Part shown: positions 46,233 through 62,749 of the stretch, one piece after another
How the letters are laid out: each line of letters opens with the position of its first letter
How positions within the stretch are numbered: the stretch's first letter is position 1
Assembly: GCF_000150275.1 (NCBI RefSeq)
Contig: NW_002060944.1
Coordinates: 7,702,735 to 7,766,734, forward strand
From: Trichoplax adhaerens
Taxonomy: Eukaryota; Animalia; Placozoa
Reading direction: 5' to 3'
DNA length: 64,000 nt
Program-made: the position numbers and the translations under genes
The notes under the pieces: generated by a model
Told to the model about the DNA's origin: nothing
The model's database searches: none
The model's input: the letters and a program-made list of their open reading frames with translations, nothing else

Positions 46233-49200
46233 ATGCCGTCGGGAAAGGTAAATATAGGAATAATAAAAATGATCTGCTAGTAATAATCACAAATAGTAAT
46301 AATACGGGTAGAGGATATTGAAAATAGCTAGATAGTCTTAATTTTATCATGGATCGAATAGAACATCGAATAAAGATTACTTGATGACTTCATGTCCTTA
46401 CCCGTTCTATAGACAAGGACTAAAGAAGATACCTGGAAGGAAGATGATTTAAAAAGAGCTATTAAGGTAAGATGCCGCGATACGGCTATCCTATGCTTTG
46501 CTTTTTACTACTACCTTAGAAATCTTTTGCTTTTAGATAGAAGAACATGGTGGTAAAACTTTTATTGTTTACAGTGATGTTAGCTTTTTCTGCTAGAATT
46601 GATTCTAATACGGTACCTGTATAGTCGTAGGGTACATGTATAGGAACGCATTCTGCGGTATTGCAATAATGAGAGAGAATAGTATAAGACTTGATGATAG
46701 TACTGGAATAGTCAAACTTTTATCATTAATTTATGACATAATATTACTTTCATATCTTTATATTAGGGTAAAGATGAAGGAAGACATCGAAGTGAAAGGA
46801 GGTAATTTCAGTAAATTAGTTTTCTAATGGTATTTATGTTTTGCCGGATATACAGCACATAACTTACTCAATACTATCTCTTGAGTTTACATGTTATAAT
46901 TATCGATGATGATAATGAGTAAATAATAAGAGAAATACATCATCACTGACTATATTCACAATATTACCGTATACTTCTAAAAGCAATAATATCTACATTT
47001 GTTTCTATCTTATAATCTGCGAATATCAACATGTAATAGACTACGACAGCTTATTGATTAAACAGGTCGTGTATTTTCCGCTTATACATTGGCACTTCAT
47101 GGAATTATCAAGTCTCGCTGTCTCTTAACTAACCCATAAAATAACAAATATCATTGAACTTCAATGCACATATCTTACCATTATCTACTTAATACCAACA
47201 TTAAGCTAAATATTGAATGCCAACGTGTTTATACTGTATTACATAAGAAGTCGTCTACATAAAAATGTAAAAATGTTATGAAATTATACAGGATGATGGA
47301 CCATCAATTGACAACTGATACCACTTATAAGCAATATTTTTTTTTAATAAACAGGAGAAATCATGACGATGATAAGGGTTCCAGCAGACATGCTAGAAAA
47401 GAAGAAGGTGGCCAAGTAGGAGATGATAAAAGAAAAGAGCGACATGATCGACCTGAGCATAGAGATAAACACAGGGAAGCACGTGAAGGACGAGAGCATG
47501 AATCGAAGAAGGATAGAGATGAAAGACATCGAAGTAGAGAAAATAGACATGATCGTAAGATTCGTCAAACTAAGGATGATTACGGTGAGGATGCGAAACA
47601 TGATCGAGATCGAAAAAAGAAAGATGATAATGAAGAACGGCATCGAGAAAGAAAAAGAGATGGCAAAGATGCTGATAGAGAGAGGAAACACCGTGACGAT
47701 AAAGGCGATAGCCACGATAGGCATAGGTCTTCCAGATCAACCGCTAATAATCAAGATGATTCAGAAAGGAAATTAGAATCCAGTCGTAGACATAAGGAAG
47801 ATAATCATTCTATTGAGCGCCCAGAGAGGCATCCCCGTCCTTCTGAAGATAAAGAAGCACGAGATCGGCGCCGTGATAGGGATAGAAAATATCGTGAGAA
47901 AGAGCAGAAAAAACAAAGTGAGGAATTGAAAGACGATCATCGACCAAGACACAGAATAGAGCGACCGTCACATGAGGGTGTTGATAGACAGGATAAAGAT
48001 CGAAGTAGAGATCGTAGACGACATCACAGCAAAGAGGGTGGTTCTGAAATACAGGACAAGGAAAATCGCGTAAGTTTTAGAATTGGAATAGAGTTTACCC
48101 ATTCAAAATAGTCATAGTCTAAGTACTATCGATAGGAATAGCGATTAATTAATTACTCCCCTTTCGAATAAGTGTTTTGCTGTTATTTAGAAATAAAAGT
48201 CAGTTTTGTCAATTTACATAAAGACTTTATACAATCTTGGTCAAGCATGCACTAAGTTATTAAAAGGGAATGATAGCTACTAAAAGATCACGTCCAATGT
48301 TGAAGTACCATATAACCTTAAATCATGCAGGAACTAGGCTACAAGCAAATACTGTAGGAACTTTGCTCTCATTAATGTCTATTAATTTAAAATCATTATA
48401 TAATGTATGGTATTCAGTCTAGAGTAAAGTTTTAATCAACTAGTACTTGAATTATCAAATACACCTCCCACATGTATAAATCAATATTTGATTTTATACG
48501 GATACTATGAGTATTAAACGTAAATTAATACCAGTTATGTTAATTTGAACATTTGGAAATTGATATGTTTGTGACTCAGCGCTCTATGAAGTTTTAATAA
48601 GACCAGTGCTAATACTATGTATATCGATGATATACAGCGACTTCGTGATGCAGTATGAGAATAAATAAATACCTCAAGATAGTACTTTAATCATTATATT
48701 GCTACCTTTTACTAGGATGAAGATAAAGAAAGACATAGAAGACATGAGGTAGGAATTTTAATGTTAAAATTTTTCGCTATTGTATGAGCATATCATAGTT
48801 AATATAAAAGGATTGCACAGTATATCAAACCGTTAACTTATTTTCAACAGACGGAGGAAGAAAGAGAAGAACATCGACGTAGAAGAAAGGAAGAGGTTGA
48901 TTGTGACGTTAATTAGACTATGCTATAAATAATGAAATAAGAATTAAGGATAGATATATTATTTTAACAAAGACCGAGGAAGAGAAAGAAGAGCGCCGAC
49001 GTCGACGAAAGGAAGAGGTTAATTGCAATTTTAACTAGACTATGTTAATAAAAATGAAATAAGAATTAAGGGCAGATTTACTATTTTAACGAAGACCGAG
49101 GAAGAAAGAGCTGAACGAAGGAGAAGACGGCATGAACGAGAGCAGGTATAAAAAATTTTGATATCATCAAAATGTCTGCAGTGATGGCTAATATTTGATA

Positions 49201-52200
49201 CATTGATAGGCTGATGAGGAGAAGGATGAACATAGAAGACGAAGAAAAGATGAGGTTTATATGAAAATGTTAAATTTGCCTTTATCTCAATCAGAATCTA
49301 TTATATAATCATGAAATTCTAAAAATTTATTATTAGACTGAAGAGGAAAGAGAAGAACGTAGGAGAAAACGACGAGAAGAAAGAGAAAGAGAAAAGGTCT
49401 AGGATGTTTCTATGATTTAGAATAGACAAATTATTGACAAACTATTATAGTTCATCTATTTATTGCATAACCATATGAGCTACTAGATTTAGAATTAAAG
49501 CGCTCAAACTTATCTTCTATGATATACCTAATATATACGCAACATTATAGGAACACATTCATGAGGGAGAAGATCACCGACATCGAAACAGAAACGAACA
49601 ACCAGAAGGGTAATATAAATGAAATTAAATTCAGTCATGATCATGATTAAAATATAAGGCAATATATTTACGTCCTCCAAAAATTTCAATTCTAATTTAA
49701 AAGTGAAGCAATCGAAGATTATACGAAGCACAAAGATCGTCCCGATAGACCAAAAGTATTTCTTTCTTTAAATTGCTTCATCGTCTTTATTTCAGTCAAA
49801 GTTGAGCTCATTATTTTTATAATACGTCTCTAGAATCAACTTGACATCGCTTATTTTACTTCTTAATCTAGGAGGCAGGGTCTAAACGGACAATTATAAC
49901 TGAAAAAGAAAGGTAATGAGCCATAAATTCAGTTGTATTTGAAATTATTTTTACACATTTGATAGACAAATTATCATTTCTTATCAAGATCGAATGATAA
50001 AAGACTTGATTTAATTCTATTATTATGTCTATATGCAACAAGTATTTAAGTATATCCATAACAGATTTGATCGGAATACATATGTCTGCAGACTTGTAAT
50101 AGCATAAAACGACGTCAATATCGTACATTTCGGTTTCTAACCGTAAATTATATTGAAATTTGGACGTAAAATATTAAATGTTCAACACTAATTATTAGGA
50201 GAGCGTATATGGCATTAAATGACAGCGATGATCAGAAAACTGATAAAGAGAAAGAATTAAGGATTAAGGAGAGAGAAAAGGCCATGCTAAAACAACTCAA
50301 AAAGGAGGTTGTCAATCAATACGAATAAATATGATAGCTTTATTTTAAAGGATAATTAACTCAATATACCCGCTTTGCCTATTATTTGAGAATTGAAAAA
50401 TTTAAGCTGTAATTCATTATCAATTACGACAGCAATTTTAATATTTTGGCGTAATTTTCTTAATAACAGGAACGCAAGAAAGACATTTTAACTACTGATC
50501 TAAAGTTCCATACTACAAGTGCAGAGAGTGCAGTAAGTGATTCGATTTTGTTGTAGATTACTGTCATGGGATTGGAGTTATCAGCAGGCAGACAGGCGAG
50601 ATATTAATTAAATCTTTATTGGATTATATGAAATAGGATGTAGTAGATGACGAAGAATCGGCACCGAAAGCTGCTTCGGCAGTTAGTGCTGCGGAAGCTA
50701 AAAATCTATTACAAGATAGTGATCTACAGACATTTGGTAAAAATGGCCAGCAAGAACCACAGGATAATTATGAAGACGATTTTGAGGTATTCAAACTGCA
50801 ATTTTCTTTAAACGATCTGTCAAGATAGAATTTGGTGAAGGAAAAATTACTTCTAGCTCAAGCATTACGCTGTTAATTACTGCCGTTCATCCTTTACAGG
50901 ATTACGAAGATGATTTTGAAGAAGATGGTGACGAAGACGTCGATGAGGTAAATTTTCGACATTAGTAAGATATGGAAAATAGTCAAAAGAAATGTTATAA
51001 TGGCTTATTTTTCAATCAATCATGTTTCATGCTTGCCTATTTTATAATTCCTAGGACCTACGCGAGGTAAATTTAGCATGATTCAAAGTTATATAATCCT
51101 ATATTATTTGATATAAAACAAGAAATAGAAGGTTTATCAATATAAATCAATACATCATACAATCTGATACCTTCATATTTTAGGTAATGCAAGCCATGAG
51201 AAAAGAAAATGAAAGCTTAAACAGAACAACAGCGGATGAAATAATAGGTAAAATCGGGAAATTATGATTCGGATCGATAACTTTAATAGTCCTATAGTAA
51301 ATTAAAGAATGAATTTAACTTGCCTTGCCACTTTAAACTTCAGAATCTAAAACAACGGAGAAAGAAGCACGACCAACTAAGGGATTTATTAATTTTACCG
51401 CTGCAAAACAACGAACATTAAATGCGAAAGTAGCTGAAAAAACTAAAAAAAGAGGAAAGGTAGGGAACTTCCGATACTTTTACATACTATTTAGTTTATG
51501 TTCTTATCTATTAAAATTATTTTAGTTCATTAGCTAAAATTAATGCTGTACGATTAATCGAAATTTCTTTAGGAATTATTAAAGTTAATTGATTTGGATA
51601 GCGTTGGATTTAATATGTTTGAACTTGAGCCCTTGAATGAGTATTCCCTATATATGAAAAGTTTTGGTCGGACCAACACCGATCAAGCTTATGTCCAATG
51701 CGGTGATGATAATCTTGATCAAGAAATTCAAACTGAGGACATTACTACTACGGATAGATGGGTTCAATTTCCAGCTGAAGGAACCCTTAGTCACGGCGCC
51801 AGTCAAACTAGAAATAGTAAGTTTATACAGAGACTCCGTATTCTTTTAATTTTCATAGCAAATTTATACTCGTCGATCTTCATTATCATCTGATGAATGA
51901 AATGAACAGTAAATTTAAAATTAAATATTTCTTGATATCTAATTTTATAGATGACGATTTATTCAGCGATTCTGAAGCTATAGTAATGCAAAATGATTCA
52001 TTAAAATTGTCGCAGTTTCTTCAATCTGCTGGTCATGTTTGTGCCGCACTGTTAGAGGAAGAAGATGCATACCGACAAGGTAAACGGGTTCAAACTACAA
52101 ATATAGGTAGTCAAGTCCAGACTCAAGTCAGTGGTGATATCTTCACTTGCGGTAGTAAATTATCATTTTTACAAGGTAAGAACTAATCGAGGTTTACGTA

Positions 52201-55200
52201 GTTGCATACGTGACAATAAATCCATTTTCCTTTGGTAAAGTCAAACAAATAGTGATACATTTATAATTAATTTTAGGTCGGCCAATCTCTCGTATGCAAT
52301 TTTTGCATAATCAAACTCATCTACTGTTGACTCTCCACCAACCAGCAGCTAATCCAGTTTCGGTTAGATAGACTAACTCATTTTCGTCGAAATTACATAT
52401 AGAAATAGAAGCTAAAATTGGGTTACTCCAGTCTGATACTATTAGCTAAGAATCTTTTTACTGTATTAATCTATCATTTATATTATCATTTATGTAAAAG
52501 GTTAAATCCGCCATCACCAGTGATATGTCATTTATATGCTTATGGAATATCAACGAACCATCGCAGCCCCAAAAGTATATTCCATAAAATACCGATTTAA
52601 TGACTTATCATAATTAAAAGAATATCTTTGGATTAAAAATATTAAGGTTACAAATACATTTACTCTTATAATTTAATTAGAGTACTTATTAGTGACGATA
52701 TGCCAAATTGTTGCTGTATGTCACCCCAAAAAGCATCGTTGGCGTTCGCTGGAACGGTAAGTTATAATGCTTGCGATGATATAACTTGTTAGCCCTTTAT
52801 TAATAACATTTCTACTGTATGGATTTGATTTTTATGATTACGTTATCTTGGTGTTCTAATCTCAGATGGATGGTGCGGTACTGGTTTGGGATCTTCGTGA
52901 AACGTCTTCACTCCATAAATCTTTCACTATCGATGGTGTCGACTGGTATTTAAGACATCCAACTTATTCTACAAGTAAGTAAAAGGATATAAAATTTTCA
53001 TAAATAAAAATTTAAGCTTTATTTATGAAAAATTTAATATCAATGCTTAGAATATAATTGGGATAGTAAATCTGATACCATATATATTTAATCATCTAAT
53101 CTCATTGCCTTAAATTAATAGATGGCACTTTACAAGATACTAATCATCACAGTCCTGTCGTATCTATACTACCTTTGGTATCTCTTGATAAGTATGCTCA
53201 TAGATGGAGCCATTGCTAATTATTTTAGGCAAATAGCTCCTAAAATACACCAAATTTTTTCCTGCCATATGAACAAGTAATATCATCGAAACTAAATTTT
53301 AGATTTTTCTTATTGATTTATCAGCAATGTCAAAAACAGTAATGCCACCTCTAAGAATAATGGTAGGAATGAAATAAATGATAATTTTTATCTTACGATA
53401 GTTGATCAGTAAATAGAGAATCGAGAATTACTACATTACATCCATTAATAGTAATGACAATTAACTGGTCTTAGATATAATTAAAATATTATTAGATAGT
53501 AAGTGTACTGTATTTAATGATATCGTTAGAGCGATATTGCCGTATTGGATAGATAAACCAAAGCCTATTTGTTATAAATTTCACTAATGTTACTTTCTTA
53601 ATTAATATTTAGATGAATCATCGGGTTTATCATTTCAACTAGCATCATTAGAGAGAGAAGGAACAATAAATATTTGGGTTTGTTCTTTACTTTGATTGAT
53701 GTCAACGATTACTTTACTTCAGTACGGACGGATCTCGTTTTAGGCTACTATTATTCTTAGATTCAATTTATTTTCAACTAGGTCGTAGTGGAAATTTCTC
53801 GACCAGATCTCGCCGGATCTACAGTAGATCTTGGTAAGCTAAAAATAAAACAATTATTTTGTCTTATAGCAAAAGCGAATTTAATTTTCATCAATATCTA
53901 TAGGATTATTACCTGGAGGCCGCGTTAAATTATTAAAAACCTCTTGGATAAATATAAAAATTCCACTCACACAGTGCGTAATTGCTCAAAAGCTTCGCAT
54001 GATTAACAGATGATGATTTAAATGTTAAGCTTAACAAAGTTGAATGTTCTACTTTAAGGAGCCTCGTAATGCCTACAAGTATTTCAACATTGGGCTTGCA
54101 GTTGGCACCAAGTGATCCTAATCACTTTTACATTGTCACCGATATGGTAAATATAACTGAAATAGCTCTATCATAATTGAAAAGCTCTATACACATTATG
54201 TAGTATCAGATTTATTCTTTGACGCTTTTGAGAAATTATATTTACAACATTTTTTTAATTGGCTTTGTGTGTTATATTCGATTTAACTATAATTTTTAGG
54301 TGTATTATGATTAACATACGTACTTGTCTGTAGGGTACAGTAATACATGATGTTCGTTCCGGTAGCCGGCCAAGTATTCGATTACATAGATCTAAATACG
54401 GTTTGTAAAGCAATGGAATGCTGATATTTTTGCTATAGATGAATATGGCAGAGCAAATATCTCACTTAAATATAATTCTTGACATCTTTTGCTTTAGCAT
54501 CTCCATGTGAAGTGGTCTCGATTGAATTCTCTCCATTTTTACAATCCTTTTTTATTGTTAGTTTTAATAGCTGTGTTTGCATTCTTGTAGACATTTGAAG
54601 CCCTTTATACACTAACCTATTTTAATCTAACTTATACTTATGGATGATCAAAATTATTAATTATAATCATTTCAATCAGATTGGATGCAATGACTGTACG
54701 GTTCGACTATATAATACAGCGACAGGTAGCTATAGTTATAGCTTTTAAGATAGATAAATATTTCGCTTTGCCATTTATAGATGAGCTAGCTTATTATGAT
54801 CGTTTGCGGTGTATAGACCTTCCTTTGCTTACGTTACGTACGAAGAAGGCTGTAGTTAATGCTTCATGGTCTCGTAGTCGACCAAGTGTAATCTATGCCG
54901 TAGATGAAAACTCAACATTTTATGTTTGGTATGTTGAAATTAACTATTTCATAAATATACATGGAATAATATTATTTTACGTGTCCTTTCATTCACAATT
55001 TTTTCCATAGGTCACTTCTGGAAACTGCTGCTGAGCCAGCTATAGTTGATAAATTCACAAATAGCAAGTAAATTGATAAAGAAATAATTTAATTCATGTC
55101 TGTCTTTATTGTTTTTAATTAATAACTATAATATCCATAGTAAACGAATAATATAATTAATATTTTAATTAGGATAACGACATTTGTATTGTCGAACGAT

Positions 55201-56694: not shown

Positions 56695-56708
56695 GTTACC
56701 ATGACAAT
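56695..56708 (+). promoter_or_regulatory. RFX X-box-like motif upstream of the tau-like repeat gene
   Basis: GTTACCATGACAAT fits RTHNYYWTRRNRAC except the last base; about 220 bp before ATG 56926. Confidence 0.5.
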
Positions 56709-56925: not shown

Positions 56926-58878
56926 ATGAACAGCTCAAGGAATAATAATTCAGCGGACTTAGAGGATGGTATCGTAGCTTCTAGGGTAAATTTGTATCGG
57001 AATAGACCCAAAAAGAAAATAAACAAGACATCGTGCCGTGGCAAGAAGCATCAAATAATTAAGAAATGTAACACGACGCCAAAGATAATAACAAGTAACG
57101 TTGATAGTAAATCACTAAGATCGAAGACAGCTCCGGCTAAAGTTAAAATCCAACCCAAATCCTCAATAAAGGTTAATTCGAAGATAGACAGCTATAATCT
57201 AAATTGCAATGTAAATAGTAGCAATGCTCAGATTAGTCCACGAACAAGAACTCCTAATATTACAGCGAAATCAACTATCGACTGTTATAATCCTAATCGA
57301 ATATCGATTAGCAAGGGAGTTAAGATCAATTTTGGCAAGAAGATTATTACTGGCGATGTAAGCGTTCGAGTTGATTGTCACAAAATGGACTATAGGCCAC
57401 CTAGGACTGACATTAAATTGAGCCCTCGAAAGGAAAGAATGGATTTAAGTAAGGTGAAAAGCTTAGTAGACTGCCATAATAAAGTACCTCAATCCACCCT
57501 TGAATGTAAAGCAAAGATTAGTAAAATACGAACTAAAATCAACCTGGAAAGTGTATGTAGCAAGATTGATAATTACAACGATAAGAGTTTAACGTTAAGC
57601 TCAAGAAAAGCTAAAGTTATCAGTAATAAATCAAGACCCAACGAAGTCCAAAGTAGTCGTATTGACTGTCGAAATAGCAGTTATAATCATTCAGCTAGCA
57701 GTGTTCAAATCTTGAATGAACCATCCGTAAAAGTCGAAGCTCATTCCCGTCTTCCTATGGATTACGCTGTAACTAAAAATCATTCTAAAGATCATGTAAC
57801 TATATTTCAAAATTCTGTTGATTTTAATCCGGTTACTGCGAAGGTTGATAGCTGTAACTATAACTTTAACAATTCAGCAAACAGTAAAGAGAAAGTGATT
57901 GTTTATCACCGTTCTAATGATATTGATATAGATGATATTGGTCCGGCGATAGATTGCCATAACAGGTCATTTGCTAATTCTACTAAAGAAGATACGAGTA
58001 CTTTGGTCTATGATAGTCCATTAGATATAAGTAAAGCGAATACAAGTAAAATTGATCATCACAATATTACATATCATCCAAAGGAGAGCTATGCTAATAT
58101 TAAGCAAGACGCAATTTGCTACCACGTCGATGCAATAGTTAGTTCGATAAATCATTCGTATCGTCACAATGAAAATAATGACATTAGTGTTGTCAGTAGT
58201 ACTGCTAACTTTAACGAAATTAAAAGTAAGATAGATCATGAAAATAAGAATTTAAATCAGGATAAGAAAGATTTGGCAAGGATTAAATCGAGTTTGATAT
58301 CCTATAAAGATATTCCGGCGAAAGTCAGCAATATTAATCCAAGTTATATTTTATCCTCTTCTAATGTAAATATCTGTAATTCCAAAGTTGAATGTGATCA
58401 AGTTGTACCTAAAATCGATTGCCATTTAACACAATATCCTACTCGGTGTAATATTTCATCCATTATTAGCGATAAATTAGATTATTCTAATATTCCAGGC
58501 AAAGTGGATCACAGTAATATCAAGTGTCGAAAAACAAAAACGAGAGCTGAAATTGTACAAGTGCAAGAGAATCGACAATATTACACTAGACCAGAGATGA
58601 ATAAACGTAGATATAACCGTCATTACGATAGTGTCAAGTATACGTCTACATCAGATGTTGATACTTTAACGAAATATCATGATCCAACGAATGTTCAATT
58701 TGTAAGCCGAGGCAAAAAAGCTATTTCTTCAACATATCAGGCTAATATTTTGACTTGTCCAAATGATCATTATAGTAATGTAAAGCCTAAGGTTGATTGT
58801 TTTAATTTTATTAGTGATAATTATCATCGAAAGCAGTACGATAGTGCGCGTTATACAACGATGGTTGAGGTACTTTAA
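56926..58878 (+). CDS. Intronless 650-aa protein with about 16 divergent tau/MAP2-like repeats of about 31 aa (putative microtubule-associated protein)
   Basis: Long ORF in AT-rich DNA with a periodic (S/P/A)K(I/V)D(C/H/S)xN core. DLSKVKSLVDCHN and KLDYSNIPGKVDHSN resemble tau DLSKVTSKCGSLGN and KLDLSNVQSKCGSKDN. Confidence 0.75.
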   Translation: MNSSRNNNSADLEDGIVASRVNLYRNRPKKKINKTSCRGKKHQIIKKCNTTPKIITSNVDSKSLRSKTAPAKVKIQPKSSIKVNSKIDSYNLNCNVNSSNAQISPRTRTPNITAKSTIDCYNPNRISISKGVKINFGKKIITGDVSVRVDCHKMDYRPPRTDIKLSPRKERMDLSKVKSLVDCHNKVPQSTLECKAKISKIRTKINLESVCSKIDNYNDKSLTLSSRKAKVISNKSRPNEVQSSRIDCRNSSYNHSASSVQILNEPSVKVEAHSRLPMDYAVTKNHSKDHVTIFQNSVDFNPVTAKVDSCNYNFNNSANSKEKVIVYHRSNDIDIDDIGPAIDCHNRSFANSTKEDTSTLVYDSPLDISKANTSKIDHHNITYHPKESYANIKQDAICYHVDAIVSSINHSYRHNENNDISVVSSTANFNEIKSKIDHENKNLNQDKKDLARIKSSLISYKDIPAKVSNINPSYILSSSNVNICNSKVECDQVVPKIDCHLTQYPTRCNISSIISDKLDYSNIPGKVDHSNIKCRKTKTRAEIVQVQENRQYYTRPEMNKRRYNRHYDSVKYTSTSDVDTLTKYHDPTNVQFVSRGKKAISSTYQANILTCPNDHYSNVKPKVDCFNFISDNYHRKQYDSARYTTMVEVL

Positions 58879-60080
58879 GCTAGATTTTGATAACTATTCA
58901 TACATTCGACATGATATGAATCTTCTAACTGTATATTTGTATGCTGGTGTTTATGCATGTCCCCTTGTCCATGTATATTAGCGAATGCTGTGTCATATTA
59001 AATATTTTATTAATGGCTTGATAATATGAATTTATTGTTGCATATTAATTATCCAATTTAATTTAGTATTTAGAATATGTTAGGATTAGATGCAATAAAG
59101 AAGATGAACAGTTTTACCATGCTATTCTGAGATTGTACTTGCATGGAGTTTTGCATGTATATCAGTATACTCATACTGAAGTGAACTAGGACAGTCATGA
59201 AAGAGTATAAGTTCTGCTTTATCGGTTGGATATCTGTGATCATTTCAGGTAGTCGGCATGTGCAACTAGGCGTACAAAAAATAGGATATGTATAGAAGTG
59301 ATCCGGTGATCCAAAGAGTAGCATCATGTTTAGGAGAGAAATCTCCATATTTTGTGATTCGGAATTTCAAGGTATTTTATTATTACTACAATACGATGAA
59401 ATAGAGAGAGAAATTTCAGTTATCCTTGATTGAATAAGGAGATTCCTGGTTTGGCTATCCAGTTACTCCTTAGCTGACTGAAAGGAGTGCAATCGATAAA
59501 AAATCGATTAAAATCATTAAGGATGGACGCATGAAACTTTTAAAATACTTGCTGTACTTCCTGAACTTCTCTCAATTCGTTATTGCTGCATGCAACCAGT
59601 ACACTAGTACAATACTGCGTTTTTTATTTTAAAGTTTAATATCTCTAAAAGTACAAAACCTACAGCTTTAAAGTTTTCAGATTATGATAGGTTATTTATT
59701 TATTATTACTCTACTCGGTTTGATATCAATTACATTAGCAATATTTTATCTGCATGAAGGCAGTCCATGTTGAATTAAACAATAAGATGCCGGTATCTTC
59801 TAAGCATTTTTATTTTATTTCTTTTGTTCTAAACTTTTGACTTTAAATCCAATTTCCTCCGTGATGCGATATCAAATCTTATTCCCGATTTTTACAATCT
59901 AATCGTTCAACTATTCAGCAATGTACTTAAATAGTCTGTTTTTAAGGATTTTACCTAGTTTTACTCGAAATTTAGTATTTTTTCGTAGCTAAACATTCCA
60001 TACACCCTCATTTCGGTACATTTTTTTGGCAAATTGCTGTACGATTTGGCAATACTAATTTTAAATTTGTGCGCTGGGAT

Positions 60081-61268: not shown

Positions 61269-62749
61269 ATGTTACGTTTCAGTCATCCGTGGTTCGATTC
61301 TGTTATGCCCTTGAATAGAGGTTTTGCTGGAAGATACGTCAATCAACCCCAAAGAAGAGGTAAACAATATATAGATACTTGAACCAGCTATCCAACTACA
61401 GTACGAGAATGATGAATCGATGCATGCAGTACATTAGTAGTAGCATACTGGCTGGCGTGTTATTTAATTGAAGCCAGATTGACTTCATTATACAGTAATT
61501 ACTAATTTAGATATTTTTCAATAGTGTCAATTAATAATCAGAACATTAATATCATACTCGCATAGACTTACCAGCATCTAAACTACTGCTTTTATCCCCC
61601 ATAGGCTATATCAACCCCTTAATGGATGATTATCATGATGAAGAAATGGAATACGGGCCCAGAGGTTATCAGACTTCGGAGCCCGAGCAATCATTTCTAG
61701 CGTTTTCCCCATTTGAAAATCGATGGCCGATGTATTCATCTCATTCTACTGAAAGCCGATATTGTAGCGAATTTCCTAATCGCTCGACGAGCAATAATTC
61801 GATACCTCGACAAAGAAGGAGGCCTACAACAAAGTCTAGAAATACGTCTCATACAACATCATCACCTCGGTCATCAGCAGCTGATCATAAGCGCGATACC
61901 ATTGAATCTCGATTCGATCCATTTGGAATTTTTCCATGGTTTTCTAATCGTTATGATGAAAAAAGTGATAATATGCAAGAAGATAGTGATCCAAAACTAG
62001 AAGAAAATGAAACTTATGGTGCCTGTGAGAAAAATTTAGCAAATATTAATGAGCAGCCATTAAAGAATGCAGCTTCGGTATCGTCCGACGAAGATATATC
62101 AAGTGGCTCAGACGACGATCAAGCAATGGAGAAAGAGGTAAACAAAGATGCAATGGTTGAGCAACATAGGTCACTTAATACCGAGAGCACCCAACAGAAT
62201 TCTTCCTCTCTTCCAAATAATGACCAAGTTATCACCTCGTTGACTTCTGAAGAGGGATACGAAGCTGACAAATCATCATCATGCAGTGATGAAGACGGTA
62301 TTCATAAATCAGATGTACCTCACAACTGCCAAAGTAGTATGGTAAAAGAAAGTAACGACGTTTCTTCCGATGAAAACCATGAAGAAAGTGAAGACCAATC
62401 TAAAACTACAGATGAAGAAATGACAACAGAGATAGTAGACTCCAATGATACTAGTAGTGATAAAGAATCCGCTGAATATTGTACTATGCAATTGGAAAAG
62501 GTTAAATCTCTAGAAGATACCGTTCAAGAGTTAGCATTAAAAGTTGAAACATTTTACGGAAGCAAAAAGGATAAGGAATACCTCTATATTGATGAATCGC
62601 TCACTCGAGTACTCTTAGAGTTAGATCAGGTTGAAACACGCGGAATACAGCAAATTAGAGATGCTCGTAAGTTAGTTGCAACCTTTGTGAACAATATTAT
62701 TGACGAATTGGAATTTCGAGTTAATTCACATAAAAACGATTCGTCATAG
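61269..62749 (+). CDS. BAG-domain Hsp70 co-chaperone (BAG3/BAG4-like)
   Basis: Exons 61269-61359 and 61605-62749 join in frame. C-terminal BAG domain FYGSKKDKEYLYIDESLTRVLLELDQVETRGIQQIRDARK follows an acidic disordered middle. Confidence 0.88.

What the first reader, a model, noticed from the sequence alone, without database searches (positions are those of the whole stretch)
56926..58878. Giant tau/MAP2-like repeat protein with about 16 repeats and a rewritten core; candidate ciliary microtubule-binding protein
Seen: repeats at about 30-35 aa spacing with cores SKIDSYN, STIDCYN, VRVDCHK, SLVDCHN, SKIDNYN, SRIDCRN, AKVDSCN, PAIDCHN, SKIDHHN, SKIDHEN, AKVSNIN, PKIDCHL, GKVDHSN and PKVDCFN. 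Many are preceded by (L/I)D(L/Y/F)S.V and followed by V.I, the layout of tau repeats. Known: tau/MAP2/MAP4 have 3-5 such repeats, each spanning about one tubulin dimer, regulated through KXGS and PGGG. Here KXGS becomes K(I/V)D(C/H), placing a fixed acid in the MARK motif plus possible metal or redox ligands, and PGGG is lost. Inference: with the X-box-like motif and WDR60 next door, it could be an undescribed axonemal MAP or ruler spanning many dimers, and informative on tau origins.
Basis: partly seen in the sequence, partly recalled or inferred. Interest (0 to 1): 0.82.

Follow-up and report, generated by a model that had tools for sequence, protein, structure and literature searches.

The report
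Divergent tau-like repeat protein in Trichoplax
A neuron-less animal (the placozoan Trichoplax) carries a single-exon gene for a disordered, basic 650-residue protein. It is built of 14 clear and about 4 decayed 31-residue units whose first half matches the microtubule-binding repeat of tau/MAP2/MAP4. The two hallmark tau motifs (KXGS and PGGG) have been replaced, and the proposed link to cilia has no real support.

Summary
ORF 56926..58878 (+) encodes 650 aa, and all 14 listed K(I/V)D..N cores are present. They sit on a ~31.5-aa lattice of about 18 periods. Held-out units score above shuffles in 13 of 14 cases.

The genome is Trichoplax adhaerens. A 99%-identical protein is annotated "hypothetical protein" in Trichoplax sp. 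H2, and one 47%-identical orthologue (708 aa) exists in a Logan assembly.

The tau reading is supported as remote homology, not as family membership.
- Pfam PF00418 is the only family hit, but it is sub-threshold (12.4 vs 27 bits).
- A full-length profile search of 1.84 billion proteins found one outside hit (E 1.5e-5). It is a tunicate tau-family protein with 11 PF00418 repeats.
- Profile-profile comparison gives P about 1e-5, and 0 of 400 column shuffles reach the real score.
- Only the first 17 columns of the unit match. G-S of KXGS is D-(C/H), and PGGG is absent.

AlphaFold2 gives mean pLDDT 25 and pI is 9.5, so the protein looks disordered and basic, like tau's repeat region.

Two reader claims need correcting. 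Canonical family members reach 10-11 repeats, not 3-5. The ciliary inference rests on a one-mismatch X-box no commoner than chance and on adjacency to WDR60.

Verdict: a new variant of a known kind, of moderate interest.

The parts
56926..58878 (+). Single-exon coding sequence, 650 aa plus stop (P0001). It is basic (pI 9.5), rich in S, K and N, and predicted fully disordered.
   Evidence: ORF. The identical 650-aa protein is in public collections, and a 7-substitution variant is annotated as hypothetical protein TrispH2_006261 in Trichoplax sp. H2. A 708-aa orthologue at 47% identity ends in the same VEVL. AF2 mean pLDDT is 25.5 with all residues below 50. The ESM Atlas model has mean pLDDT 0.46.
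57133..58833 (+). Repeat array of about 18 periods of ~31.5 aa. Fourteen have the core (S/A/P)(K/R)(I/V)D(C/H/S)(H/Y)N and about four are decayed.
   Evidence: Column frequencies are V/I 86% at col 14, K/R 79% at col 17, V/I 100% at col 18, D 82% at col 19, C/H 75% at col 20 and N 82% at col 22.
57796..57852 (+). The most tau-like unit (VTIFQNSVDFNPVTAKVDS). It is the stretch picked by Pfam PF00418 profile positions 1-19.
   Evidence: ORF residues 299-317, E 0.16. (7.6 bits against a tau-family repeat HMM built here).
56926..57132 (+). N-terminal basic, non-repeat region of 69 aa.
   Evidence: Translation. It aligns with the orthologue from its internal Met.
58546..58740 (+). Decayed part of the array. 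About two periods have no recognisable core, but VQ(I/F)V-type unit starts remain (EIVQVQ, NVQFVSRGKK).
   Evidence: the 96-aa gap between the cores at ORF residues 535 and 631, of which this stretch is the part outside the two flanking units. No unit was called here by the repeat HMM.
56695..56708 (.). X-box-like palindrome GTTACCATGACAAT, 218 bp upstream of the ATG. It has one mismatch to GTHNYYATRRNAAC. It is a candidate only.
   Evidence: There are 13 such sites in the window against 17.9 expected from shuffles, so the site alone is not evidence of RFX control.
59094..59099 (+). AATAAA, a possible polyadenylation signal about 215 nt after the stop codon.
   Evidence: Read from the sequence. 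This is inference only.

Best explanation
This is a real, placozoan-restricted, intrinsically disordered basic protein. Its tandem ~31-aa units descend from the same ancestral repeat as the tubulin-binding repeat of tau/MAP2/MAP4.

Shown: the first 17 positions of each unit, (V/I)-x-(I/V)-x4-(L/I/V)-(D/N)-(L/F/Y)-(S/N)-x-(V/I)-x-(S/A/P)-(K/R)-(I/V), keep the order and spacing of the tau residues. The cryo-EM study of microtubule-bound tau places those residues on the microtubule surface:
- V275, I277, L282 and L284 are buried against the lattice.
- I260/C291 sits in a hydrophobic pocket at the inter-dimer interface.

Inferred: the protein lies extended along a protofilament, one unit per tubulin dimer (about 8 nm). 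With 14-18 units it could tie together roughly 110-145 nm of lattice and stabilise it.

The second half of the unit is rewritten.
- The Gly-Ser of KXGS is Asp-(Cys/His). In tau that Ser hydrogen-bonds alpha-tubulin E434 and is the MARK phospho-switch.
- The turn before the conserved Asn is one residue shorter.
- PGGG is replaced by an S/N/K-rich linker that keeps the period.

If the protein is regulated, it must be by other means. Conserved SPR/TP sites in the early units or the Cys/His pair are candidates, but both are speculation.
For: Real gene:
- A 658-codon open frame in 33% G+C DNA.
- An intact orthologue at 47% identity.
- A near-identical copy in Trichoplax sp. H2.

Real repeats.

Tau relationship:
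- PF00418 is the only Pfam family hit by the protein or by any single unit.
- Tau is the best PDB sequence hit for both the unit profile and the full-length profile. For the full-length profile the top chain is the microtubule-bound R2x4 construct 6cvn_D.
- An exhaustive HMMER search of 1.84e9 proteins returned exactly one non-placozoan protein at E <= 0.001. That protein, P0004 (E 1.5e-5), scores 1.1e-141 on PF00418 with 11 repeats.
- BLASTP of either placozoan protein against P0004 gives 1e-5, with multi-repeat alignments in register.
- hhalign unit against unit gives P 9.6e-6 and score 19.2. 400 column shuffles average 6.4 and reach at most 12.3.
- hhalign full-length gives P 2.3e-5 over 175 columns.

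Other support:
- Mapping of conserved columns onto tau contact residues uses with the text of bioRxiv 10.1101/267153.
- Disorder and basic charge resemble tau's repeat region.
- Two bona fide tunicate tau-family units already carry K(I/V)DS, so Gly to Asp at that position occurs within the family.
Against: - The protein fails Pfam's gathering threshold (12.4 vs 27 bits; the orthologue scores only 7.6 bits).
- A tau-family repeat HMM built here scores the protein no better than its shuffles. Tau-side queries (PF00418, P0004, alignment A3) do not recover the gene in the genome.
- The unit profile hits ATAD2 bromodomains in the PDB at the same E-value as tau.
- Only 17 of 31 columns carry signal. 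A global unit alignment scores lower than the local one.
- The E-values of 1e-5 come from repeat-on-repeat alignments, whose statistics may be optimistic.
- The family profile rests on only two diverged sequences.
- An Asp next to the residue that in tau contacts alpha-tubulin E434 could weaken the canonical binding mode.
- No experiment or expression datum was available. Microtubule binding is entirely inferred.
Confidence: 0.6

Rival explanations
1. It is a lineage-specific disordered repeat protein unrelated to tau. The shared half-motif would be convergence or chance between two S/K/V/I-rich 31-aa repeats, and the protein would do something else, for example bind nucleic acid, bind metal through D-C-H, or act as a scaffold.
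For: - Sub-threshold Pfam score.
- A tau HMM does not separate the protein from its shuffles.
- An equally good chance hit to ATAD2 bromodomains.
- The most conserved tau positions (G18, S19, P27-G30) are all absent.
- The invariant feature of the placozoan unit, (I/V)D(C/H)(H/Y)N, has no tau counterpart.
Against: - Out of 1.84e9 proteins the single outside hit is a tau-family protein, the family predicted beforehand, and no low-complexity noise appears at similar E-values.
- The column order matters: 0 of 400 column shuffles reach the real hhalign score.
- The period is the same (31-32 aa), and 11 conserved positions are in the same order.
Confidence: 0.25
2. One reading: it is an axonemal or ciliary microtubule-associated protein or 'ruler', under RFX/X-box control and functionally linked to the neighbouring dynein-2 gene WDR60.
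For: - An X-box-like palindrome lies 218 bp upstream of the ATG.
- The upstream neighbour is a true WDR60/DYNC2I1 orthologue (E 1.5e-19).
- Trichoplax epithelia are ciliated (general knowledge).
- An earlier unchecked note in this scan reports RFX-type sites at cilia genes in this genome.
- A multi-dimer-spanning array would suit a ruler.
Against: - The site has a mismatch in the second half-site, and such sites are not enriched over shuffles (13 against 17.9).
- A 300-bp promoter would hold one by chance about 8% of the time (my estimate).
- WDR60 lies tail-to-head, so no promoter is shared.
- Adjacency is not functional evidence in animals.
- No match to any known ciliary or microtubule-inner-protein family.
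Confidence: 0.12
3. It is not a functional gene, only a fortuitous or decaying open reading frame.
For:
- The only annotation is 'hypothetical protein'.
Against: - With about 7.5% stop codons expected per random codon at this base composition, 658 open codons have a chance of the order of 1e-22 (my calculation).
- The frame is intact at full length in a relative with only 47% identity, and motif positions are preserved.
Confidence: 0.02

Closest known systems
Tau/MAP2/MAP4 tubulin-binding repeat family (Pfam PF00418), in particular the many-repeat invertebrate forms such as the tunicate protein P0004 (nearest named relatives: Clavelina lepadiformis LOC143466172 and Ciona savignyi H2YK32)
   Same: - Tandem 31-32-aa units in a disordered, basic protein.
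- The first 17 unit positions, V-x-I-x4-(L/V/I)-D-(F/L/Y)-S-x-V-x-S-K-(C/I/V), are shared in the same order.
- A conserved Asn follows the core, with an aromatic or His three residues later.
- The array sits at the C-terminal end of the protein.
- Large repeat numbers exist in the family, 11 in tunicates.
   Different: - KXGS is K(I/V)D(C/H): Gly is 97% and Ser 100% in 311 family units, against Asp 82% and Cys/His 75% here.
- The turn is one residue shorter.
- PGGG is absent.
- There are 14-18 units against at most 11.
- There is no long acidic projection domain, only a 69-aa basic N-terminus.
- It is a single exon, whereas vertebrate tau repeats are one per exon (general knowledge).
- It scores below the Pfam threshold.
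Human tau repeat R2 bound to microtubules (PDB 6CVN; Kellogg et al., bioRxiv 10.1101/267153)
   Same: - It is the best PDB sequence hit of the full-length placozoan profile.
- The placozoan columns that are conserved coincide with the R2 residues described as buried on, or salt-bridged to, the lattice.
   Different: - The Ser that hydrogen-bonds alpha-tubulin E434 and acts as the phospho-switch is missing.
- His299 is replaced mostly by Tyr or Phe.
- Binding of the placozoan protein is untested.
Fungal PF00418 proteins (Rhizopus, Gigaspora; P0018, P0059, P0091)
   Same: They show that tau-type repeat arrays of about 8-10 units occur outside animals with nervous systems. A placozoan relative is therefore not phylogenetically odd.
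   Different: The fungal repeats keep KXGS and PGGG and pass the Pfam threshold. The placozoan repeats do not.

Membership tests
Tau/MAP2/MAP4 tubulin-binding repeat (Pfam PF00418) | Score at or above Pfam's gathering threshold (27 bits) | tested here: not met
   12.4 bits, E 0.16 for the window protein, and 7.6 bits for the orthologue. One of 14 single units matches at E 0.14.
Tau/MAP2/MAP4 tubulin-binding repeat (Pfam PF00418) | Tandem units with a 31-32-residue period | tested here: met
   Core-to-core spacing is 30-35 aa, and 17 intervals of ~31.5 aa separate the first and last core.
Tau/MAP2/MAP4 tubulin-binding repeat (Pfam PF00418) | N-terminal half of the unit: V-x-I-x4-L-D-(L/F)-S-x-V-x-S-K-(C/I) | tested here: met
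   hhalign maps query columns 2-18 onto family columns 1-17 with P 9.6e-6. 0 of 400 column shuffles are as good.
Tau/MAP2/MAP4 tubulin-binding repeat (Pfam PF00418) | KXGS motif (the Ser is the MARK/PAR-1 site and a tubulin contact) | tested here: not met
   The Gly position is Asp in 82% of units. The Ser position is Cys in 50%, His in 25% and Ser in only 11%. In 311 family units Gly is 97% and Ser 100%.
Tau/MAP2/MAP4 tubulin-binding repeat (Pfam PF00418) | PGGG at the end of each unit | tested here: not met
   No Gly-rich columns are present, and the whole protein has 8 Gly. Global unit alignment gains nothing in the second half.
Tau/MAP2/MAP4 tubulin-binding repeat (Pfam PF00418) | Conserved Asn of the beta-turn and His three residues later (N-I-x-H) | tested here: inconclusive
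   Asn is present in 82% of units but one residue closer to the Lys. Position +3 is Tyr in 36% and Phe in 11%. It contributes no score in hhalign.
Tau/MAP2/MAP4 tubulin-binding repeat (Pfam PF00418) | Significant sequence relationship to recognised members | tested here: met
   The only outside hit in 1.84e9 proteins is an 11-repeat PF00418 protein at E 1.5e-5. BLASTP gives 1e-5. hhalign gives P 2.3e-5. The match is one-directional: tau-side queries do not recover it.
Tau/MAP2/MAP4 tubulin-binding repeat (Pfam PF00418) | Intrinsic disorder and net positive charge of the repeat region | tested here: met
   AF2 mean pLDDT is 25.5 with no residue above 50. pI is 9.5, with 105 K+R against 65 D+E.
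Tau/MAP2/MAP4 tubulin-binding repeat (Pfam PF00418) | Binds and stabilises microtubules | not testable with these tools
   This needs co-sedimentation, TIRF or cryo-EM, or at least a complex prediction with tubulin. None of these is offered here.
RFX/X-box-regulated ciliary gene | Consensus X-box in the proximal promoter, conserved in orthologues | tested here: inconclusive
   There is a one-mismatch site at 56695-56708. Such sites are not above chance in the window.

The most novel reading that the evidence does not exclude
A tau-superfamily protein in an animal without neurons in which the KXGS phospho-switch has been replaced by an Asp-Cys/His-His/Tyr triad repeated 14 times. Attachment of a ~110-145 nm protofilament 'staple' to microtubules (possibly ciliary ones) would then be set by metal ions or redox state instead of MARK-type kinases. 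If so, the hydrophobic/Lys first half of the tau repeat would be the ancestral tubulin-binding module, and KXGS and PGGG would be regulatory parts of the repeat that this lineage has been able to replace.
Probability: 0.15. Interest if true: 0.8.

Novelty: new variant of a known kind. Interest (0 to 1): 0.55.

Why it matters
Tau biology centres on two motifs, KXGS and PGGG, that are almost invariant across the recognised family. In the 311 units sampled here the Ser of KXGS is present in all but one, and every unit keeps at least two Gly of the Gly triplet. The role of PGGG is still unsolved (stated in bioRxiv 10.1101/267153).

A natural relative that keeps the lattice-contacting first half and the 31-residue period but has replaced both motifs would be a ready-made experiment. 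It would show which parts of the repeat are needed for microtubule binding.

It would also place a tau-type array in Placozoa, a phylum without neurons. The evolutionary survey of the family read here (PMC4815063) does not mention that phylum. Two text searches that combined Trichoplax or Placozoa with tau, MAP2 and MAP4 listed no paper making the link.

It also corrects the common statement that these proteins have 3-5 repeats. Databases already hold 10-11-repeat forms in tunicates, a gastropod and Mucorales fungi.

Tried and rejected
- Sequence search of the whole protein against the PDB found nothing.
- The ESM Atlas had no usable feature hit, and its structure hits were meaningless bacterial proteins at TM <= 0.4.
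- PF00418, the tunicate protein P0004 and the tau-family alignment A3 were each searched against the whole Trichoplax genome and found nothing. They did not even recover this gene, so these blanks do not show that a canonical tau gene is absent.
- A tau-family repeat HMM built here from 311 units did not score the placozoan proteins above their shuffles. I read this as the HMM's information sitting in G18, S19 and PGGG.
- An iterated placozoan repeat HMM shrank to 27 columns and was dropped in favour of a core-anchored ungapped alignment.
- I first guessed a tunicate genome. The Ciona spliced-leader word occurs only twice and the guess was wrong. Genome identity came from the Trichoplax sp. 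H2 cluster member.
- The bacterial promoter/terminator scan is irrelevant for an animal genome.
- The WD-like ORF 54681..55010 gave no PDB hit.
- Conservation between orthologous units is only slightly higher in the motif columns than in the linkers (54% against 46%, p 0.12), so it gives no strong selection argument.
- The gene identifier TrispH2_006261 occurs in no searchable paper.
The orthologue's DNA, promoter, host sample and dN/dS could therefore not be examined.
- The contig is not human. The gene is a single exon, so no joined exon model was needed.
Full report
**What is there**

The window is AT-rich animal DNA, about 33% G+C. The assembly has 105.6 Mb in 1414 contigs. The protein encoded at 56926..58878 is in public collections. 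It clusters at over 90% identity with 'hypothetical protein TrispH2_006261 [Trichoplax sp. H2]', from which it differs at 7 of 650 residues. Earlier notes of this scan had also called the genome Trichoplax. The organism is therefore the placozoan Trichoplax adhaerens, not human. The gene is one uninterrupted exon, so no exon joining was needed.

The frame is open from 56902, and the first ATG is at 56926. At this base composition a random frame would carry about 7.5% stop codons, so 658 open codons are not chance (my calculation). One orthologue is known: P0002, 708 aa, from a Logan assembly with no source name. It is 47% identical over the full length and ends in the same VEVL.

**The repeats**

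Spacings between successive cores are 30-35 aa. Three larger gaps of 60-61 aa and one of 96 aa correspond to two and three periods. The lattice from first to last core therefore has 17 intervals of about 31.5 aa, about 18 periods in all. Fourteen have an intact core and about four are decayed.

An HMM built from the 13 regex-found cores detects 15 units in the protein and 16 in the orthologue. In a split-half test, 13 of 14 held-out units beat the 99th percentile of their own shuffles. Units are only 13-30% identical to each other, and there is no tandem repeat at the DNA level, so the array is old. The orthologue has one extra unit.

The unit consensus, is:
- V/I at columns 2 and 4, and a tendency to K at column 8.
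- I/V/M at column 9, D/N at 10, L/Y at 11, and S/N at 12.
- V/I at column 14 (86%), S/A/P at 16, K/R at 17 (79%), and V/I at 18 (100%).
- D at column 19 (82%), C/H at 20 (75%), H/Y at 21, N at 22 (82%), and Y/F at 25.

**Is it tau-like?**

Sequence-to-profile searches are marginal.
- PF00418 is the only Pfam family touched by the protein (12.4 bits against a 27-bit cut-off, E 0.16).
- It is also the only family touched by the orthologue at a comparable weak level (7.6 bits) or by any single unit (1 of 14).
- The unit profile's best PDB hit is tau (E 0.07), but ATAD2 bromodomains score the same (E 0.12).
- The full-length profile's best PDB hit is the microtubule-bound tau R2x4 construct 6cvn_D (E 0.03), with the next hit at 0.5.

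Because these left the question open, I spent the exhaustive search. The two-sequence full-length profile was run against 1.84 billion proteins. It returned the two placozoan proteins and exactly one other protein at E <= 0.001: P0004, E 1.5e-5, 40 bits. P0004 is an unmistakable tau-family protein, scoring E 1.1e-141 on PF00418 with 11 repeats. Its nearest named relatives are tunicate (Clavelina lepadiformis, Ciona savignyi), followed by fish and reptile tau.

Further comparisons agree.
- BLASTP of either placozoan protein against P0004 gives 1e-5, with alignments running through several units in register.
- I collected 311 distinct tau-family units from the 120 proteins and built a family profile.
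- hhalign of the 28 placozoan units against it gives P 9.6e-6 and score 19.2, with placozoan columns 2-18 on family columns 1-17.
- Four hundred column shuffles of the placozoan alignment average 6.4 and never exceed 12.3. The reversed alignment scores 8.1.
- The tool's own hhalign of the full-length alignments gives P 2.3e-5 over 175 columns, about six units.

Evidence on the other side:
- The family HMM does not separate the placozoan proteins from their shuffles.
- Tau-side searches of the genome recover nothing.
- A global unit alignment adds no score in the second half.

My reading is as follows. The similarity is real and ordered, and it is confined to the first 17 positions. It is best explained by common descent. 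The protein nevertheless fails three defining features of PF00418: the threshold, KXGS and PGGG. I therefore call it a remote relative or new variant, not a member.

**Mapping to the tau-microtubule structure**

The preprint on microtubule-bound tau (bioRxiv 10.1101/267153, read) makes these statements:
- V275, I277, L282 and L284 are buried against the lattice.
- K259 faces an acidic patch of alpha-tubulin.
- I260/C291 sits in a hydrophobic pocket at the inter-dimer interface.
- S262 hydrogen-bonds E434, and its phosphorylation detaches tau.
- N265 stabilises a beta-turn.
- H299 is buried between beta-tubulin F395 and F399.
- PGGG is not visible in the maps and its role is unsolved.

In the hhalign register the first group corresponds to placozoan columns 2, 4, 9, 11, 17 and 18, which are among the conserved ones. 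The positions of G261 and S262 are Asp and Cys/His. The Asn is kept one residue earlier. The His position is mostly Tyr or Phe.

The protein is predicted disordered throughout: AF2 gives mean pLDDT 25.5, with the caveat of a two-sequence alignment, and the ESM Atlas model gives 0.46. It is basic, with pI 9.5.

From this I infer, without direct evidence, an extended protofilament-binding mode with one unit per dimer, covering about 110-145 nm for 14-18 units. I also infer that MARK-type control at KXGS is absent. Two tunicate units carry K(I/V)DS, so Gly to Asp at that position occurs inside the recognised family.

**The ciliary idea**

The upstream neighbour on the same strand is indeed WDR60/DYNC2I1. 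Its exon 51594..51893 matches residues 503-574 of chain 6rlb_C at E 1.5e-19. The site GTTACCATGACAAT at 56695-56708 resembles an X-box with one mismatch. The window holds 13 such sites against 17.9 expected from shuffles. Neither fact is evidence for an axonemal role. It remains possible, because Trichoplax epithelia are ciliated, but I give it about 0.12.

**What is known**

The evolutionary survey of the family (PMC4815063) traces non-vertebrate homologues 'from Platyhelminthes to marine chordates' and notes odd architectures in Ciona and the fungus Rhizopus. It does not mention Placozoa, Cnidaria or sponges. Two text searches that combined Trichoplax or Placozoa with tau, MAP2 and MAP4 listed no paper making the link. 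The gene identifier appears in no searchable paper.

By Pfam, P0004 has 11 repeats. By my HMM count, a gastropod protein and Rhizopus proteins have about 10.

**Verdict**

The tau-like reading is supported as remote homology with a rewritten second half. The ciliary reading is unsupported. Novelty: a new variant of a known kind. Interest is moderate at 0.55. It could matter to tau biologists as a natural KXGS-less, PGGG-less array, but everything beyond sequence is inference.

Noticed in passing
window 61622-62749 (+): A 375-aa single-exon ORF with a C-terminal BAG domain (PF02179, E 9.8e-13) and a long acidic, Ser-rich N-terminus. It is probably a BAG-family Hsp70 co-chaperone gene.
   Followed up: partly
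window 47278-55010 (+): A WDR60/DYNC2I1 (dynein-2 intermediate chain) orthologue. Exon 51594-51893 matches human WDR60 residues 503-574 (E 1.5e-19). An 834-bp exon at 47278-48111 encodes an extremely R/D/E/K/H-rich stretch.
   Followed up: partly
P0004, P0005, P0019, P0021, P0059, P0091 (proteins): Recognised tau-family proteins with 8-11 repeats exist in tunicates (11, and 8 in Ciona savignyi), the gastropod Nucella lapillus (about 10) and Rhizopus (about 10). This contradicts the usual '3-5 repeats'. The Rhizopus proteins also carry precomputed PF02652 (lactate permease) and PF00293 (NUDIX) hits, which is either an odd fusion or a mis-merged gene model.
   Followed up: no
P0004 residues 358-388; P0019 residues 544-574: Two tunicate tau-family units have K(I/V)DS in place of KXGS. 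This is the same Gly-to-Asp change that is fixed in the placozoan protein.
   Followed up: partly
The reversed control word occurs zero times. This is probably chance and was not examined.
   Followed up: no
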